DNA of 63,921 nt, filler included, from Octopus bimaculoides (lineage: Eukaryota): assembly GCF_001194135.2 (NCBI RefSeq). It is 6 parts of 4 records of this genome, joined end to end, with 100 filler letters (N's around TTAATTAATTAA, not from the genome) between each part and the next. Parts side by side here need not be neighbours in the genome. Positions count along the whole stretch, not along the records: positions 1 to 25,541 come from NC_068998.1; 5 more parts are not named here. The stretch is one strand, 5' to 3'. Under the pieces are notes generated by a model. It worked only from the letters and a program-made list of their open reading frames with translations. It did not search any database and was not told the DNA's origin. Of the stretch, positions 2,832 to 21,826 are shown in pieces (within the stretch, counting starts at the first letter, position 1; each line of letters begins with the position of its first letter). Made by a program: the position numbers and the translations under genes.

Positions 2832-2865
2832 ATGATATTTTTTGCACTTGTCTTTCTCGCTTGTG
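2832..2865 (+). CDS. Gene A exon 1: signal peptide MIFFALVFLAC (phase-1 donor)
   Basis: ATG at 2832, 11 hydrophobic codons +1 nt, consensus donor TGTG|GTAAGT; same junction (TGT G|gtaagtac) as gene B exon 1. Confidence 0.85.
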
Positions 2866-3434
2866 GTAAGTACTCATATTTAAGAAGCCGAAATTTTAAT
2901 GAATATTTCCAAATCATAATTTAATATGGACGCCGAACTTTGTTTCTCTATCCATCGACTGATGAAATAATAATAAAACTAAATATTGTCGAACTTAAAA
3001 GGAAGTTAGCGAGATTTTCTAATTTCCATGATATCGATATAATTCTTTACAAATGACGATAAATGCTAACTTATCGTCATTTGTAAAAGATTGTATCAAT
3101 ATCATGGAAATCAGAAAATCTTGCAGTTTAAGAGAAACTATCTGATTACCACCTATTATTCTGATCAGAATGAAATATTATAGATTATGATGTAAGTATA
3201 ACATATATTTAATTATCAATTAGTTATGGCACAATTGTATTTGCTGCCTTGTATGGTGTATGGTGAAATTATATTAATCACTTAATAAATAAATGGTGAA
3301 ATTATACTTCGCATACGTAGCCATGAATCACATATTATTCTGACTACAATAAAATATTACACTATATGTTTTGTTTATAACACCTATTCAATAATTAGAT
3401 TATTATTATTAAATATTGTATATTACAACAGCAG

Positions 3435-3525
3435 GTGTTGGTTTATCGAGTGAGTGCATTGCGATGGCAAGAGGACACTGTGCTGAAACCTATGGAGGAA
3501 CTTTCACAAAGGAAAACTTCTGCAA
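3435..3525 (+). CDS. Gene A exon 2: (G)VGLSSECIAMARGHCAETYGGTFTKENFC(K), phase 1->2
   Basis: Acceptor acaacagcag|, 91 nt open, donor AA|GTATAT (weak); same length and Cys positions as gene B exon 2. Confidence 0.85.
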
Positions 3526-4269
3526 GTATATATGATTCCATTGCTTGTTCTAATATTCTCCTTACAGTAATACACACACACACACACACACACTCACAAA
3601 CATACAAACACACACACTCAAACATACATACACAGACTCACAAACATACATACACACACTCACAAACATACATACATATAGATGAATGCATATATATGTG
3701 TGTGTATAGGTATATGTATATATGTATATATACATATATACGTGTTTGTATGTGCGCGCATGTGTGTGCCTGTGTGTATATATTTATTATCATTCTATGT
3801 ACTCCTAACACTAGGCTCAAAAAAGAAACCTTAGCTGCCACGATGGGTGGTCTTCTTTAAAAAAAAGTAAACGCTGTAAAAAAGTGAACCCATAACAAAG
3901 TCAACGAACGAAAAGAGAGAATGAACGGCGGAGAGACATGATCATAAATACTATGAAATAGTTGATCTATGATTTACACACACAACTATGCAAGATCCCC
4001 TCCATCAGAAAAGACAAAACCAAAAACAAAATACAAGAATAAAAGTATACAGGAAATAACCAACAACATGAGAAAAACCCACAACAGATGCTATAGAAGG
4101 CCGATATACCGACAGAAAAACACAACCTGCGCTAAACAAAACAACACACAATACAAAAACCAATACAACAAAAGACTCGGACCAAACGCATAACAACACA
4201 TACTGATACAATACAATATCCCCCAGAGAAAAAAAAAATGCAGGGTGACCCACCACCATCACAAATGTG

Positions 4270-5960
4270 GAACAAATGTTTTAACAGAAAGTTGCTTGAA
4301 ATTTTCAGATGTCGAAAACTAAGCAGATTTAATTCACTGGTACTGGCTAAAGAAATTCAGTAGCTTACATGGGAGTCTGAGAGACGAACTTCAAGATTGC
4401 ATTAATGGAGGAACAATGCCGGATTTTGTGACTAGTGGGAGGACAATACGCATTATGCAAGATAATAGCAAAGGTAATACAGTTAGAAAATATAGATCAA
4501 TCACTTGCTTACCATTAGTGCGGAAGCTGTTAACAGGAATGCTTTCGGAAAGCATTTACAAGCACCTTGACAGCAGTCGCAGGAAAAAGGCTACAGGAAC
4601 GCATAGACAAAGCAGTTCTGAACGATGTTATTTAGCAATAAATATTGATATATTGTACTAGAGTCTATGGTGTAAGTATATTTAGTATAGCAGACAACAT
4701 AAGACAAGTAATTCTCTGTAGCATGAAGGAATGGATAGTAGATTTCTACTCAAGTGACATTCTGTCTGGGTAAATTAATATCAAGTGAAAATTTTCCATG
4801 GTGAATGGTTGTCCCCTTAAATATGTGTCTTATGTTTGATCCCCCGCAGTTTAGTTTTAAGGAAGATAAAGGCAGGGTATCATTTCAGAAATAGTAAGGG
4901 AAAAATTAACCATTTGCTCTACGTAGAAGATCTGGAGAATTTTCGTACGAATGAAAACGAAATAGGTTCCTCAGTACAGACGTAAGAATCCTCAACACAG
5001 TTATAGGCATGGAATTTTGCATAGATAAGTGTGCAATATTAGTCATGAGAAGGTGATAGGAGGTTAGCAACGAAGGCATCTTAATTACGAGATATTCAGA
5101 CATTAAATCATTGAAAGGAATAGAGAGTTATAAGTATCTAGAAGTATTAAAATCTGACAGAGTACAAACTACAAAACGAAAACGAAAATTGAGAAGGAGT
5201 ACATCAGAGGGGTGAGGAAGCTAATTAAGTCAAGGCTAAATGGTTTGAATCTAGCGAAGGCTGTAAACACTTGGGCAGTATCATTACTTAGATATTAAGC
5301 AGGTTTTGTAGATTGGACCGACCTACAAAGGAGTGTGGAAGTGGATTAATATCAGTAGAAAAATGCGTGGTGTTAGCTAGAGTAGATATAGACTATTATG
5401 CAGGTAAGAATGAAGAAAGTTTATTAAAAGCTGCTAGAGTCACAGCAGAGAATACTAAAAATGAATCCGACCGCTCTCAAAAAATAAGTAAAAAAAAAAA
5501 AAAAACAACAGGAAAACTAATCCAGAATCCTTGTCCGATCCCAAAATCTAATCAATCCATGCCAGTTACAAGACCAAACGAGTCTAAAAGCTACATTCGA
5601 ATCCATCCAGTTCTTGAGATATCTTGTCCACGACAAACAAACAAACAAACACGACTGAAAACTATAATACTTATATACAAGGGAAGCTGAGCCAAAACTA
5701 TGAAATGAGAACAGAAAACAGATGGTATAGGTACACCCCAGAAAATGTCAAAGAAAAGGCGAAAGCAGACATACACTGGGATATACCAATACACACAGAT
5801 AGATAAATCTAGGTTAATAGACTCCGTATAGTTACCATAGGTAGCCAAGAAATAATATGCCTTCTAATCGATGTATGAATACCAACAGATGACAACTTTT
5901 AAAGTGGGAAGTACTGAAAATAAAGGTAACTCGAACCAAATGTGAAGCCTAAAAGCAGAA
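4270..5960 (+). mobile_element. Decayed R4/Dong-clade non-LTR retrotransposon (RT + RLE endonuclease remnants) in gene A intron 2
   Basis: ADLIHWYWLKKFSSLH, GRTIRIMQD..KG....YRSITCLPLVRKLLTG, GSGLISVEKCV, HWDIPIHTDR; many stops and frameshifts. Confidence 0.8.
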
Positions 5961-6649
5961 ATAATTTTTGTAATAGTAGGCATATTAGGTATAATAAAAA
6001 GTAAAAAAAAAATCAGTCAAATACATAACCAAAACAGCAGGATTTACAAGCGTATATAACATAGAAAATAGCACTACGATCCACCGCATATATCCTCCGT
6101 AAAACAATTTCAATGGAGTAAAAATATGAGCACCACAATAAAACACTGAAGACCTTATAAATACCCTACAATCTAGATGCATTGCAAAAGTCGACATTAC
6201 ATTGAACTGCACGCATATTGCGTAAAGTACTGTCTGTGTGAGGTCCTTGTTGGGACTTGACAAACAGTACAAACCCCCGGTAGACACAATATCCTACTTC
6301 AACAACCTTCGAATGTAGAGCCTAAAAACAAACAATTCCTATCATAGTAGCCTCATTAGGTATGATAATAAAAAAAAACATACAGAATATTACATAACAA
6401 AAACACCGGGACTTACAAGCTTATATAACATACAGAAAATAGCACCACTTCGCACAACATACCACTTTCAGTACAGTGAAAATAAGATCATCACAACAAA
6501 CCACAGTACATAACTAAGGCACACTGAGCTGCGCTGGGTAGTGCAGAGAAGTCACGTGATAAATATAAGACTATTAAATAATAATAATAATAATAATAAT
6601 AATAATATTTTAAAAAAAGGATTGACGTAACTCTTCACGAAGGTAAATA

Positions 6650-20072: not shown

Positions 20073-20315
20073 CTGGAAGATATAAATGTCATGAGAAATT
20101 CTACATTCAGGCATTCTTATATTGTTTAATTCTTATTTTCTACAGGCTTGATTATTTTTGACTCAAAATCGTCTTTCATTTTACGGAAATATATTAGCAA
20201 AATGAACGAAATGCGTAATTCATTTATTAAATGAACGACCACTTCTCAATTACGTAGTTCTGTCACAAGACACAGCATCACGAGAAAATGTATTCTCACA
20301 GTCAGATATAATATT

Positions 20316-20480
20316 GGCTTCAAATTTTGGCACAATACCAGTAAATTTTATTTCATCGAGCCGAATACGCTAATGGTGATTATTATATCGACCCCAAAAT
20401 GATGAAAGGCGAAGTGAACTTCGGGAGAATTTGAACGCAGAATGTAAAGACGGATGGGAAGCCGCTAAGCATTTTCTCCT
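20316..20480 (-). mobile_element. Degenerate SINE family B copy in gene B intron 2
   Basis: gatgaaaggcgaagtgaacttcgggagaatttgaacgcagaatgtaaagacgg is the reverse complement of the family B body. Confidence 0.65.
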
Positions 20481-20939
20481 AACGATAGTCAATGTCTTGA
20501 ATATCTGATGTAGTATAACCCATAAGTTATTTCATTTGTAAACAACTCTGGTGAGGTTAAACGGATTTAATTTCAAAATAACGAAAATAATTGACGGTGA
20601 AATTATATTTAACCGACAATTGCTCAACACAAATTGTATATTCTTTCTGGAATTAGATATCAGACGTATGTAAGTAAACAAACAATATTATGGTATAGTG
20701 AGTTACAAAACTGTCCAGTGTCGGCTAGTTCAAATCATCTTGTTGCAATCTTTTGTTAAATGTAAATGGATATATTGTAAGATATTACTTAAAAGATATG
20801 ATCAATTTCAAAGACTTGGTTCCAGCTAAATACATTTAGTATTTTGATAATAAAAACGGTTATATAACAACATATATGTCAGAAATAACTATATAAATAT
20901 TAACACTAACATTAATACTTGCACTAAAGTTGTATTTAC

Positions 20940-21030
20940 CTGCAAAATATGCTACTCTTGTCAAGTTTAGCATAAACAGAGCCACACAATTTTTTTGCCT
21001 CATCAGTGCAATCGAATGCCACCGCAACAC
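20940..21030 (-). CDS. Gene B exon 2: (G)VAVAFDCTDEAKKLCGSVYAKLDKSSIFC(S), phase 1->2
   Basis: Acceptor ttcaaattctttag|, 91 nt, donor CAG|GTAAAT. Confidence 0.88.
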
Positions 21031-21789
21031 CTAAAGAATTTGAAATTTCTTTGGTAATTTACATATGATTTTACGACATGGAATTTTTGTTATAATGCAA
21101 TACCATCGTTTGCGATTGTTTTAAATGTGTGTCATAGCGAGAATACATTTATGCGTTTCATGTCCGATTTTGTCGTTTTCTGCGGATGACGTCGACGGTT
21201 CAGTATAATCCTTGTCAGACCAAGGCTGTTATAATACGATGGGGATTATGTATTATTAATAACACTAAAATGTGCAACAAAATATTCGTTCAAATTTGTG
21301 TCCATGTTGGCAGTTCTAAAATTAGTAAATTTATTTAACAGATAGTTATTCAACTGATATCTTCTATTTTGCTTATATAACCATTGTTCATCTTAGTACT
21401 ATAATTAGCATGTCATGTAATTGCTATTCTTTTCAAGAATACAACAATACCAAATAAATACATTAACTTAACAGCTTATCCTGTGGGTAGGGGTGTGATT
21501 CACACCATGACTGGTGGAAAACAAAATCCATTAACTGCAACTGAAATAAAAATTGTCAACAGTTAGTCATTAATTACATGCAATAAAGATAGTTAAGAAA
21601 GAGAAGTTAGAAATGTTCTGTGCCACAGATAGGCTGAGAGGTTAATAAAAAGATAAACCTATTGATAAATACATAGAGTAATTAATGGTCATGTAGAAAT
21701 ATACATTTAGATTTATAGTGATATTATTAAAACATAAATAGCAATAATCACGAAAACTGTGAAGTAATTACTGTAGCATATGTACTTAC

Positions 21790-21826
21790 CACAAAAGAGG
21801 AGAAAGATAAATGGAGAAAACCTCAT
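21790..21826 (-). CDS. Gene B exon 1: signal peptide MRFSPFIFLLFC (phase-1 donor)
   Basis: Minus-strand ATG at 21826, 12 codons +1 nt, donor TGTG|GTAAGTAC. Confidence 0.87.

What the first reader, a model, noticed from the sequence alone, without database searches (positions are those of the whole stretch)
2832..21826. Hidden pair of paralogous 4-exon genes encoding an unrecognised small six-cysteine, membrane-tailed secreted protein family
Seen in sequence: splicing at canonical GT/AG sites gives A = MIFFALVFLACGVGLSSECIAMARGHCAETYGGTFTKENFCKNLKAFHACFDGTDEKCDAYFNALGSSICSMKLKTLLYFVILAVVATYI (90 aa, +). It gives B = MRFSPFIFLLFCGVAVAFDCTDEAKKLCGSVYAKLDKSSIFCSKYQKFYKCIKEKDRFCTGFFEFAYYHKCMVKIRSVLMIAVVTLIYTLT (91 aa, -). 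They share intron phases 1/2/0, exon lengths 91/88/60 and a gapless C-X7-C-X13-C-X8-C-X7-C-X11-C pattern, plus Y after C2, FC at C3 and F-x-x-C at C4. Only 17 of 79 residues are identical from the exon-2 Gly onward. Independent recovery of the same architecture on opposite strands makes chance very unlikely. Inference: a fixed disulphide scaffold with hypervariable surface (A near-neutral, B Lys/aromatic-rich) suggests a diversified cell-surface recognition, immune, chemosensory or gland-secreted family. I cannot assign it to a named Pfam family. The amphipathic periodicity suggests a helical disulphide bundle.
Basis: partly seen in the sequence, partly recalled or inferred. Interest (0 to 1): 0.9.

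Follow-up and report, generated by a model that had tools for sequence, protein, structure and literature searches.

The report
Octopus RGM-like surface protein gene cluster
Two real, already annotated but unstudied Octopus bimaculoides genes belong to a tandem, so far octopus-only family of small six-cysteine helical proteins that are probably lipid-anchored to the cell surface and most resemble the BMP-binding end of repulsive guidance molecules.

Summary
The models are incomplete and the genes are not hidden. Both are RefSeq loci of Octopus bimaculoides: LOC128249757 (112 aa) and LOC128249839 (105 aa), named "uncharacterized protein". Each has five coding exons. It encodes a polar linker with small residues, which turns the "membrane tail" into a typical GPI-anchor signal.

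No assembly gap touches an exon. The pair belongs to at least 13 such loci on one chromosome. A third member starts in the window at 25265, and a fourth lies 6.4 kb to the left. Secreted multi-domain relatives exist in O. vulgaris and O. sinensis. No member was found outside Octopus.

An ortholog fragment from another sample keeps the splice sites of exons 3-5, with dN/dS about 0.2, so selection looks purifying rather than diversifying. AlphaFold predicts three helices.

The only recurrent similarity to a known family is to the RGM N-terminal domain, a three-helix, three-disulfide BMP/GDF-binding module. That similarity is borderline, and the BMP-contact residues are not conserved. Function is untested. 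Interest is moderate.

The parts
2832..2865 (+). Gene A (LOC128249757), coding exon 1. ATG plus most of the signal peptide. 34 nt, ends in phase 1, donor GTAAGT.
3432..3525 (+). Gene A coding exon 2: end of the signal peptide, helix 1 and Cys1-Cys3. The RefSeq acceptor is at 3432.
8023..8110 (+). Gene A coding exon 3 (88 nt): Cys4-Cys6, helices 2-3.
9288..9350 (+). It encodes the linker RLVKRHTPRPPLFGSSPHPNE with a candidate GPI omega site G-S-S. Acceptor TTTTAG, donor GTACGT.
10412..10471 (+). Gene A coding exon 5 (60 nt including the stop): MKLK plus a 15-residue hydrophobic C-terminal tail.
6841..7189 (.). Assembly gap inside intron 2 of gene A. It abuts a ~190-nt inverted repeat (6648-6840 against 7459-7592). 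It does not affect the coding sequence.
21790..21826 (-). Gene B (LOC128249839), coding exon 1 (37 nt, phase 1, donor GTAAGT).
20940..21030 (-). Gene B coding exon 2 (91 nt): Cys1-Cys3.
19985..20072 (-). Gene B coding exon 3 (88 nt): Cys4-Cys6. Conserved with its splice sites in L003.
18962..19003 (-). It encodes KHTTPKSNSGNRVG with candidate omega sites S/N/S-G. Conserved in L003 with AG/GT borders and an in-frame 6-nt length difference.
18481..18540 (-). Gene B coding exon 5 (60 nt including the stop): VKIR plus a 15-residue hydrophobic tail. An AATAAA overlaps the stop codon.
25265..25301 (+). Coding exon 1 (37 nt, phase 1, donor GTAAGG) of a third paralog, LOC128249838 (P0006, 108 aa). It lies head-to-head with gene B. 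The rest of the gene is beyond the end of the piece.

Best explanation
The window holds two complete members (A and B) and the first exon of a third member (C) of a tandemly duplicated gene family. The family has been found so far only in Octopus.

**Gene plan.** Each gene has five short coding exons.
- Exon 1 and the start of exon 2 encode a cleavable signal peptide.
- Exons 2-3 encode a ~55-residue domain with six invariant cysteines. It is predicted to fold as a three-helix bundle locked by three disulfides.
- Exon 4 encodes a short polar Pro/Ser/Thr/Gly linker that carries small residues.
- Exon 5 encodes a basic spacer and a 15-residue hydrophobic C-terminus with nothing after it.

**Inferred processing.** The protein enters the ER and forms its disulfides. 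The C-terminal peptide is then exchanged for a GPI lipid at the small-residue site in exon 4. This leaves a ~65-70-residue helical module tethered to the outer face of the plasma membrane.

**Inferred function.** The domain is the closest thing in Octopus to a free-standing copy of the N-terminal domain of repulsive guidance molecules. That domain is itself a three-helix, three-disulfide module of a GPI-anchored protein, and it clamps BMP/GDF ligands. The most likely function is therefore a small GPI-anchored binding module or co-receptor for a secreted ligand or a receptor ectodomain. Different paralogs would carry different surfaces. The multi-domain relatives without a tail would be soluble versions.

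**Shown versus inferred.**
- Shown: gene structures, family membership, tandem organisation, purifying selection, and predicted helicity.
- Inferred: GPI anchoring, homology to RGM_N, and any ligand binding.
For: **Genes are real.**
- The five-exon CDS from the window is identical to RefSeq proteins P0001 and P0002.
- All splice sites are canonical.
- An ortholog fragment from an independent read set (L003) keeps the exon 3, 4 and 5 borders. It has an in-frame indel in exon 4 and dN/dS ~0.21.

**Family.**
- A profile of A and B searched against 1.84 billion representative proteins gave 22 hits. All are Octopus except one spurious repeat protein.
- At least 13 single-domain loci lie on chromosome CM046618.1.
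- The six Cys are the only invariant columns across the family.
- Neighbouring members lie right of the piece and left of it.

**Fold.** AlphaFold2 gives pLDDT 78-92 over the domain and three helices.

**GPI-like tail.** With exon 4 included, A has G86-S-S, about 9 spacer residues and a 15-residue tail with mean Kyte-Doolittle hydropathy 2.4. B has S/N/S-G, a spacer and a 15-residue tail with hydropathy 2.2. 10 of the 13 family members scanned, A and B included, pass the same rule of thumb.

**RGM_N link.**
- Pfam PF06535 is the only family hit repeatedly: 14 of 31 separate domains, best E = 2.2e-4, with no other family hit more than once.
- Family member P0018 scores 29.1 bits against a gathering cut-off of 24.2.
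- A and B themselves score 15-17 bits.
- With the 31-domain profile, the seven best PDB sequences of 177,635 are all RGMA, RGMB or hemojuvelin N-domains (E 0.015-0.55).
- hhalign gives P = 3.4e-4.
- Both share six Cys and the identical core spacing C-X8-C-X7-C, preceded by F and with L/Y and aromatic positions in register.
Against: - No RGM_N score for A or B reaches Pfam's cut-off.
- The PDB E-values are above 0.01, and the hhalign probability is only 38%, covering just the Cys3-Cys5 stretch.
- The outer cysteine spacings differ. RGM has C-X4-C...X22 and X21. Octopus has C-X7-C...X13-17 and X11.
- HMMER aligns octopus Cys1 to RGM Cys2, so at least one disulfide may not be equivalent.
- Foldseek of the full-length model against the PDB gave no significant match and no RGM entry in the 50 matches listed of 55.
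- The BMP/GDF-contact residues of RGMB (Arg100, Gly101, His106; PMC7354924) have no counterparts. Only the Leu103 position is matched, by a conserved aromatic.
- GPI anchoring rests on a rule-of-thumb scan, not on a trained predictor or an experiment.
- No expression data were available, so the exon-4-skipped isoform cannot be excluded as a minor form.
Confidence: 0.6

Rival explanations
1. The domain is a new, octopod-born helical disulfide fold with no common ancestry with RGM_N. On this view the shared F-C-X8-C-X7-C stretch is convergence in a small cysteine-rich helix. The anatomy (signal peptide, domain, GPI-like tail) is as above, but the partner is unknown.
For: - RGM_N similarity is sub-threshold for A and B and is confined to the Cys3-Cys5 segment.
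- The outer Cys spacings differ.
- Foldseek found no RGM match.
- No relatives were found outside Octopus.
Against: - 14 of 31 domains independently pick RGM_N out of 24,736 Pfam models, and nothing else recurs.
- One family member passes the curated cut-off over profile positions 6-56 of 70.
- The seven best PDB hits are all RGM N-domains.
- The cysteine count, the number of helices and the GPI context all match.
Confidence: 0.3
2. These are precursors of soluble secreted peptides such as antimicrobial, pheromone, venom or mucus peptides. The C-terminal hydrophobic segment would be a propeptide removed by proteolysis, not a membrane anchor.
For: - The proteins are small, cysteine-rich, signal-peptide-bearing and tandemly expanded, which is typical of effector peptides.
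- Tail-less relatives exist: P0010, P0011 and the eight-domain P0004.
- There are weak single hits to Big defensin (B, E 0.009) and Myticin (P0007, E 0.76).
Against: - The defensin and myticin hits are single, sub-threshold and lie mostly on the signal peptide.
- The tail with its preceding small-residue site is kept in most single-domain members and in the other-species fragment. That conservation argues for a function of its own.
- dN/dS ~0.2 is low for arms-race effectors.
Confidence: 0.07
3. They would be type I proteins held in the membrane by a true transmembrane tail directly after Cys6.
For: - Skipping exon 4 keeps the frame in both genes.
- Other loci in the family have RefSeq isoforms differing by 7-10 residues, so alternative splicing occurs in the family.
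Against: - RefSeq lists only the five-exon product for both loci.
- Exon 4 is conserved with its splice sites and reading frame in another species.
- It has a counterpart (K-x-H-T-x-P, linker) in both paralogs and across the family.
- A 15-residue tail containing Thr and Tyr, with no cytosolic residues, is short for a stable transmembrane helix.
Confidence: 0.03

Closest known systems
Repulsive guidance molecule N-terminal domain (Pfam PF06535 RGM_N; RGMA/RGMB/hemojuvelin; PDB 4UHY, 4UHZ, 4UI1, 6Z3G-6Z3M)
   Same: - It has six cysteines and three helices.
- The central spacing F-C-X8-C-X7-C is identical, with conserved hydrophobic positions.
- It sits on a GPI-anchored extracellular protein.
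- It is the only Pfam and PDB family that the octopus domains hit repeatedly (PMC7354924).
   Different: - The octopus proteins consist of this domain alone. They have no von Willebrand D-like C-terminal domain, no GDPH autocleavage site and no neogenin-binding part.
- The Cys1-Cys2, Cys2-Cys3 and Cys5-Cys6 spacings differ.
- The RGD/RGN loop and His106, which contact BMP2 and GDF5, are absent.
- Scores are below threshold for A and B.
- The octopus genes are tandemly expanded (at least 13 loci), whereas RGM genes are few.
Small GPI-anchored cysteine-rich modulators in general (Ly6/uPAR three-finger proteins, neuritin/CPG15, GFRalpha/GAS1). This comparison rests on my own knowledge of these families.
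   Same: - The overall plan is the same: signal peptide, one small disulfide-locked domain, GPI signal.
- They are often clustered and lineage-expanded.
- They act as co-receptors or modulators. This is a working analogy only.
   Different: - Ly6/uPAR proteins are beta-structured with 8-10 Cys.
- Neuritin and GFRalpha/GAS1 gave no Pfam hit at E <= 1.
- None of them shares the cysteine pattern seen here.
Multi-domain octopus relatives: LOC128248155 (P0004, 540 aa, 8 domains), O. sinensis LOC118763774 (P0018), and O. vulgaris CAI9735827, CAI9735829 and CAI9735840
   Same: They carry the same six-cysteine domain. The profile scores are significant and the Cys columns are invariant.
   Different: - They have two to eight tandem domains.
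- Most carry a Y-P-x3-P-D insert between Cys2 and Cys3.
- Most have no hydrophobic tail, so they are probably soluble.
- They lie on other chromosomes.

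Membership tests
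RGM_N domain (Pfam PF06535) | Score at or above Pfam's gathering cut-off (24.2 bits) | tested here: not met
   - A scores 15.6-17.5 bits and B 13.2-14.7 bits.
- Family relative P0018 scores 29.1 bits and P0015 scores 22 bits.
- 14 of 31 domains hit at E <= 1.
RGM_N domain (Pfam PF06535) | Three-helix bundle with six cysteines forming three disulfides | tested here: inconclusive
   - Six Cys are invariant.
- AlphaFold2 predicts three helices with pLDDT 78-92.
- Disulfide pairing could not be read, and Foldseek against the PDB gave no RGM match.
RGM_N domain (Pfam PF06535) | Cysteine framework C-X4-C-X22-C-X8-C-X7-C-X21-C (human RGMB, sequence verified) | tested here: not met
   The octopus framework is C-X7-C-X13(-17)-C-X8-C-X7-C-X11-C. 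Only the central X8/X7 part is the same.
RGM_N domain (Pfam PF06535) | BMP/GDF-contact residues in the alpha2-alpha3 linker and alpha3 (RGD/RGN loop, Leu103, His106 of RGMB; PMC7354924) | tested here: not met
   After Cys5 the octopus consensus is x-x-[YF]-F-x-F. There is an aromatic at the Leu103 position, but no R-G-[DN] and no His.
RGM protein family (RGMA/B/C, whole protein) | C-terminal von Willebrand D-like domain with a GDPH autocleavage site, binding neogenin | tested here: not met
   The proteins are 105-112 aa. After the six-Cys domain there is only a 14-21-residue linker and the tail. These are not RGM proteins.
GPI-anchored proteins | N-terminal signal peptide plus a C-terminal tripartite signal. 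The signal has small residues at omega and omega+2, a polar spacer of about 8-12 residues, and a hydrophobic segment of 12-20 residues at the very C-terminus. | tested here: met
   - This was a rule-based scan only.
- A has G86-S-S, a spacer and a 15-residue tail. B has S79-N-S-G, a spacer and a 15-residue tail.
- 10 of the 13 family members scanned, A and B included, pass the same rule.
- No trained predictor or experiment was available.
Octopus six-cysteine family defined here (alignments A3/A4) | Six invariant Cys, D/E before Cys1, Ala at Cys1+4, F/Y before Cys3, aromatic pair after Cys5, and a conserved exon plan (37 or 34 / 91 / 88 / short linker exon / 60 nt; phases 1, 2, 0, 0) | tested here: met
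   - Domain HMM scores are 67-68 bits for A and B.
- The exon plan is shared by A and B.
- Parts of the plan are seen in C (exon 1 of 37 nt; exon 2, of which 29 codons were mapped), in the upstream paralog (exon 3 of 88 nt) and in L003.
   None of these families was hit at E <= 1, or E <= 10 for A and B, in Pfam scans of A, B, 15 family members and 31 domains.

The most novel reading that the evidence does not exclude
Octopods have taken the BMP/GDF-binding three-helix module of repulsive guidance molecules, freed it from the rest of the protein and put it directly on a GPI anchor. They have then multiplied it into a chromosomal cluster of a dozen or more surface variants, plus soluble multi-domain forms. 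The result would be a lineage-specific set of tunable co-receptors or traps for TGF-beta-family or other secreted ligands, possibly used in the nervous system or sensory epithelia.
Probability: 0.15. Interest if true: 0.7.

Novelty: new variant of a known kind. Interest (0 to 1): 0.45.

Why it matters
Cephalopod genomes are known for lineage-specific gene expansions linked to their unusual nervous systems and sensory organs. Most of the small novel genes are still just "uncharacterized protein" entries.

This family is compact, clustered, under purifying selection and probably on the cell surface. That makes it easy to study: a 55-residue domain, simple expression, and a PI-PLC test. The borderline link to the RGM N-domain gives a concrete hypothesis, namely binding of BMP/GDF-type ligands.

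If the link holds, this would be the first free-standing, expanded form of that module. If it does not hold, the family is a new small helical disulfide fold restricted to octopods.

It also shows that the tail is better read as a GPI signal.

Tried and rejected
- **Foldseek against the PDB.** I used the full-length AlphaFold model, which still carried the signal peptide and tail. The best E was 1.3 and the hits were generic helical proteins. This is uninformative.
- **phmmer of P0018 against the PDB.** Nothing meaningful. Only profiles reach RGM.
- **Word-indexed homolog search with the 15-sequence alignment.** It returned only six proteins already known, so it did not widen the family.
- **Six-frame regex control for the cysteine patterns.** It was swamped by (GT)n and (TATG)n microsatellites translating to CVCV... 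Apart from those low-complexity runs and a handful of other Cys-rich low-complexity stretches next to them, only the true exons match. It is not a useful chance estimate, so I rely on BLASTP and HMM statistics instead.
- **Whole-window repeat search.** It was dominated by N runs and microsatellites. No duplicated block carries the genes, so A and B are old duplicates and not a recent inverted duplication.
- **Exon 2 of the B ortholog in L003.** The contig starts inside intron 2, so exons 1-2 could not be compared.
- **Big defensin, DUF5332, Thioredoxin_9 and Myticin hits.** Each is a single, sub-threshold hit that does not recur across the family. Rejected.
- **P0012 (3096 aa, metagenome).** A spurious repeat match, with domain scores below 0.
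- **Rfam and tRNA scans of the window.** No hits.
- **Literature.** No paper mentions these LOC identifiers, and none describes such a family in Octopus.

Full report
**Where the window comes from.** The window is identical, with 0 mismatches over 20,471 bases, to Octopus bimaculoides chromosome record CM046618.1 of assembly GCA_001194135.2, near 49.29 Mb. It is AT-rich (35% GC) and full of microsatellites.

**Observation.**
- A (+) is 2832-2865, 3435-3525, 8023-8110 and 10412-10471. B (-) is 21826-21790, 21030-20940, 20072-19985 and 18540-18481.
- Phases 1/2/0 and exon lengths 91/88/60 are correct. The spacing C-X7-C-X13-C-X8-C-X7-C-X11-C and the 17/79 identity are correct.
- The two proteins are significantly similar (BLASTP E = 4e-09).

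**Assembly gaps.**
- The gap at 6841-7189 lies in intron 2 of A, next to a ~190-nt inverted repeat.
- The gaps at 11913-12208, 12656-13208 and 14542-14551 lie between the genes. The gap at 21993-22448 lies upstream of B.
- No exon or splice site touches a gap.
- The exon 2/3 junction of A keeps its phase. It aligns without gaps to B and to 13 paralogs, so nothing coding is hidden there.

- Both genes are RefSeq loci. LOC128249757 is P0001 (112 aa) and LOC128249839 is P0002 (105 aa). Both are named "uncharacterized protein".
Both segments are in the window with canonical borders: A 9288-9350 (63 nt) and B 19003-18962 (42 nt).
- The five-exon CDS assembled from the window equals P0001 and P0002 exactly.
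- RefSeq also uses the upstream AG of a CAGCAG tandem acceptor at exon 2 of A (3432).
- The extra exon is real coding sequence. A contig from an unrelated read set (L003, Logan SRR11869391) carries exons 3, 4 and 5 of a B ortholog with all splice sites kept. It has a 6-nt in-frame length difference in exon 4.
- Over those 60 codons, pS is 0.50 and pN is 0.15, which gives dN/dS of about 0.21.
- A and B also share a K-(R)-H-T-x-P motif in this exon.

**The family.**
- A two-sequence domain profile searched against 1.84 billion representative proteins gave 22 hits at E <= 1e-3. Apart from one spurious repeat protein, all are from O. bimaculoides, O. vulgaris or O. sinensis.
- Thirteen single-domain loci lie on the same chromosome. 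They are LOC128249755, -757, -758, -820, -821, -822, -826, -827, -838, -839, -910, -945 and LOC106877823.
- All thirteen share a signal peptide and six Cys, which are the only invariant columns, followed by a linker. Most end in a hydrophobic C-terminus.
- LOC128249838 (P0006) starts in the window at 25265-25301, head-to-head with B, and continues beyond the piece.
- An 88-nt exon-3-like exon with AG/GT borders lies 6.4 kb left of base 1 (L001 653-740). The cluster therefore extends in both directions.
- Relatives with two to eight tandem domains and mostly no tail exist on other chromosomes.

**Topology.**
- AlphaFold2 with the 15-sequence alignment gives mean pLDDT 77. Over the domain it gives 78-92 and three helices.
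- With exon 4 included, both proteins end in a small-residue site (A: G-S-S; B: S-N-S-G), about 9 polar or basic residues, and a 15-residue hydrophobic stretch that runs to the last residue. 10 of the 13 family members scanned, A and B included, pass the same rule of thumb.
- This is the classical GPI-attachment signal by established rules. It was tested here only by a simple scan.

**Closest known family.**
- Pfam gives no above-threshold hit for A or B. Both touch RGM_N (PF06535) at E = 0.01-0.04.
- Across 31 separately scanned domains, 14 hit RGM_N (best E = 2.2e-4), and no other family is hit more than once.
- The O. sinensis member P0018 passes the curated cut-off (29.1 against 24.2 bits, profile positions 6-56 of 70).
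- A 31-domain profile searched against all PDB sequences ranks seven RGMA, RGMB or hemojuvelin N-domain chains first (E 0.015-0.55).
- hhalign against RGMA and RGMB gives P = 3.4e-4 with probability 38%, over the Cys3-Cys5 stretch only.
- According to PMC7354924, the RGM N-domain is a bundle of three helices with three disulfides. [quoted passage not shown] RGMs are GPI-anchored.
- The resemblance is therefore coherent: six Cys, three helices, identical F-C-X8-C-X7-C core, and GPI context.
- The resemblance is also incomplete. The outer Cys spacings differ, and the RGD/RGN loop and His106 are missing. Foldseek found nothing, and the C-terminal RGM domain is absent.
- I file the proteins as RGM_N-like and not as RGM family members. 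I put common ancestry at roughly even odds.

**Function.**
- The best-supported mechanism is a disulfide-locked three-helix module displayed on the outer membrane leaflet by a GPI anchor. It would act as a binding module or co-receptor.
- A BMP/GDF partner is a hypothesis from analogy only.

**Surroundings.**
- The 8-kb spacer between the convergent genes A and B holds decayed integrase-like ORFs (15312-16153, minus strand; Integrase_H2C2 E = 0.0017).
- Intron 2 of A holds a GIY-YIG-like ORF fragment next to the gap (E = 8.7e-4).
- No tRNA or Rfam family was found.
- No paper in the library mentions these loci.

**Verdict.**
- This is a real and correctly spotted pair of paralogs, but the genes are already annotated, have five exons and are probably GPI-anchored.
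- They belong to a larger octopus-restricted cluster whose nearest known relative is the RGM N-terminal domain.
- Novelty: a new variant of a known kind. Interest: moderate.

Noticed in passing
window 25265-25301 (+): This is the first coding exon (37 nt, phase 1, donor GTAAGG) of a third family member, LOC128249838 (P0006, 108 aa). It lies head-to-head with gene B, 3.4 kb away. Its exon 2 lies at about window-equivalent 29.6 kb (29 codons mapped to 29602-29688), beyond the end of the piece.
   Followed up: yes
L001 653-740 (+), which is 6.4 kb left of window base 1: An 88-nt exon with AG/GT borders encodes YYYKLHNCFFLVNRDCMTYFAYLHVHRCS. This matches the Cys4-X7-Cys5-X11-Cys6 exon 3 of the family. 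It shows a fourth paralog upstream and matches none of the retrieved proteins. It could be unannotated or a pseudogene.
   Followed up: partly
Both may be used. This was not testable without RNA-seq.
   Followed up: no
window 6648-6840 and 7459-7592; ORF 7190-7344 (-): A ~190-nt inverted repeat (96-97% complementary) brackets the assembly gap in intron 2 of gene A. Between the arms is an ORF fragment with a sub-threshold GIY-YIG nuclease match (E = 8.7e-4). This is possibly a remnant of a Penelope-like or other mobile element.
   Followed up: partly
window 15312-15776 (-) and 15872-16153 (-): Two adjacent ORFs lie in the A-B spacer. One carries an integrase zinc-binding motif (Integrase_H2C2, E = 0.0017, below cut-off). 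The other has a DDE-integrase-like stretch (QSDIGRGF...HGKPRHSQTQGSVERAN) and no Pfam hit. This is probably a decayed retroelement or integrase-derived transposon.
   Followed up: partly
window 18478-18486 (-): An AATAAA hexamer overlaps the stop codon of gene B (offset 3 from the first base of TAA). The next ATTAAA is 429 nt downstream. The 3' UTR could be extremely short, or this signal may not be used.
   Followed up: no
window 5334-5381 (+) and 17692-17739 (-): The same short peptide-like stretch (CGSGLISVEKCVVLAR and CGKGLISAEDCVVLVR) appears in intron 2 of A and just downstream of B, in opposite orientation. This suggests copies of one dispersed repeat.
   Followed up: no
borders of gaps 11913-12208, 12656-13208, 14542-14551 and 21993-22448: These four assembly gaps are flanked by TA/TATA-type microsatellites that translate as IYIYIY, so the breaks look like assembly failures at simple repeats. 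The gap at 6841-7189 instead abuts an (ATT)n array and an inverted repeat. The long 'inverted repeats' reported across the window are N runs, not sequence.
   Followed up: yes
P0004 / LOC128248155 (O. bimaculoides, another chromosome): This is a 540-aa secreted protein made of eight tandem copies of the same six-cysteine domain. Most copies have a Y-P-x3-P-D insert between Cys2 and Cys3, and there is no hydrophobic tail. Two- and three-domain versions occur in O. vulgaris and O. sinensis.
   Followed up: partly
family loci LOC128249945, LOC106877823, LOC128249826, LOC128249820: RefSeq lists two or three isoforms for these loci. They differ by 7-28 residues (99 vs 106, 103 vs 113, 120 vs 131 vs 148 aa). 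Alternative splicing around the linker or tail therefore seems common in the family, and some isoforms lose the hydrophobic tail.
   Followed up: no
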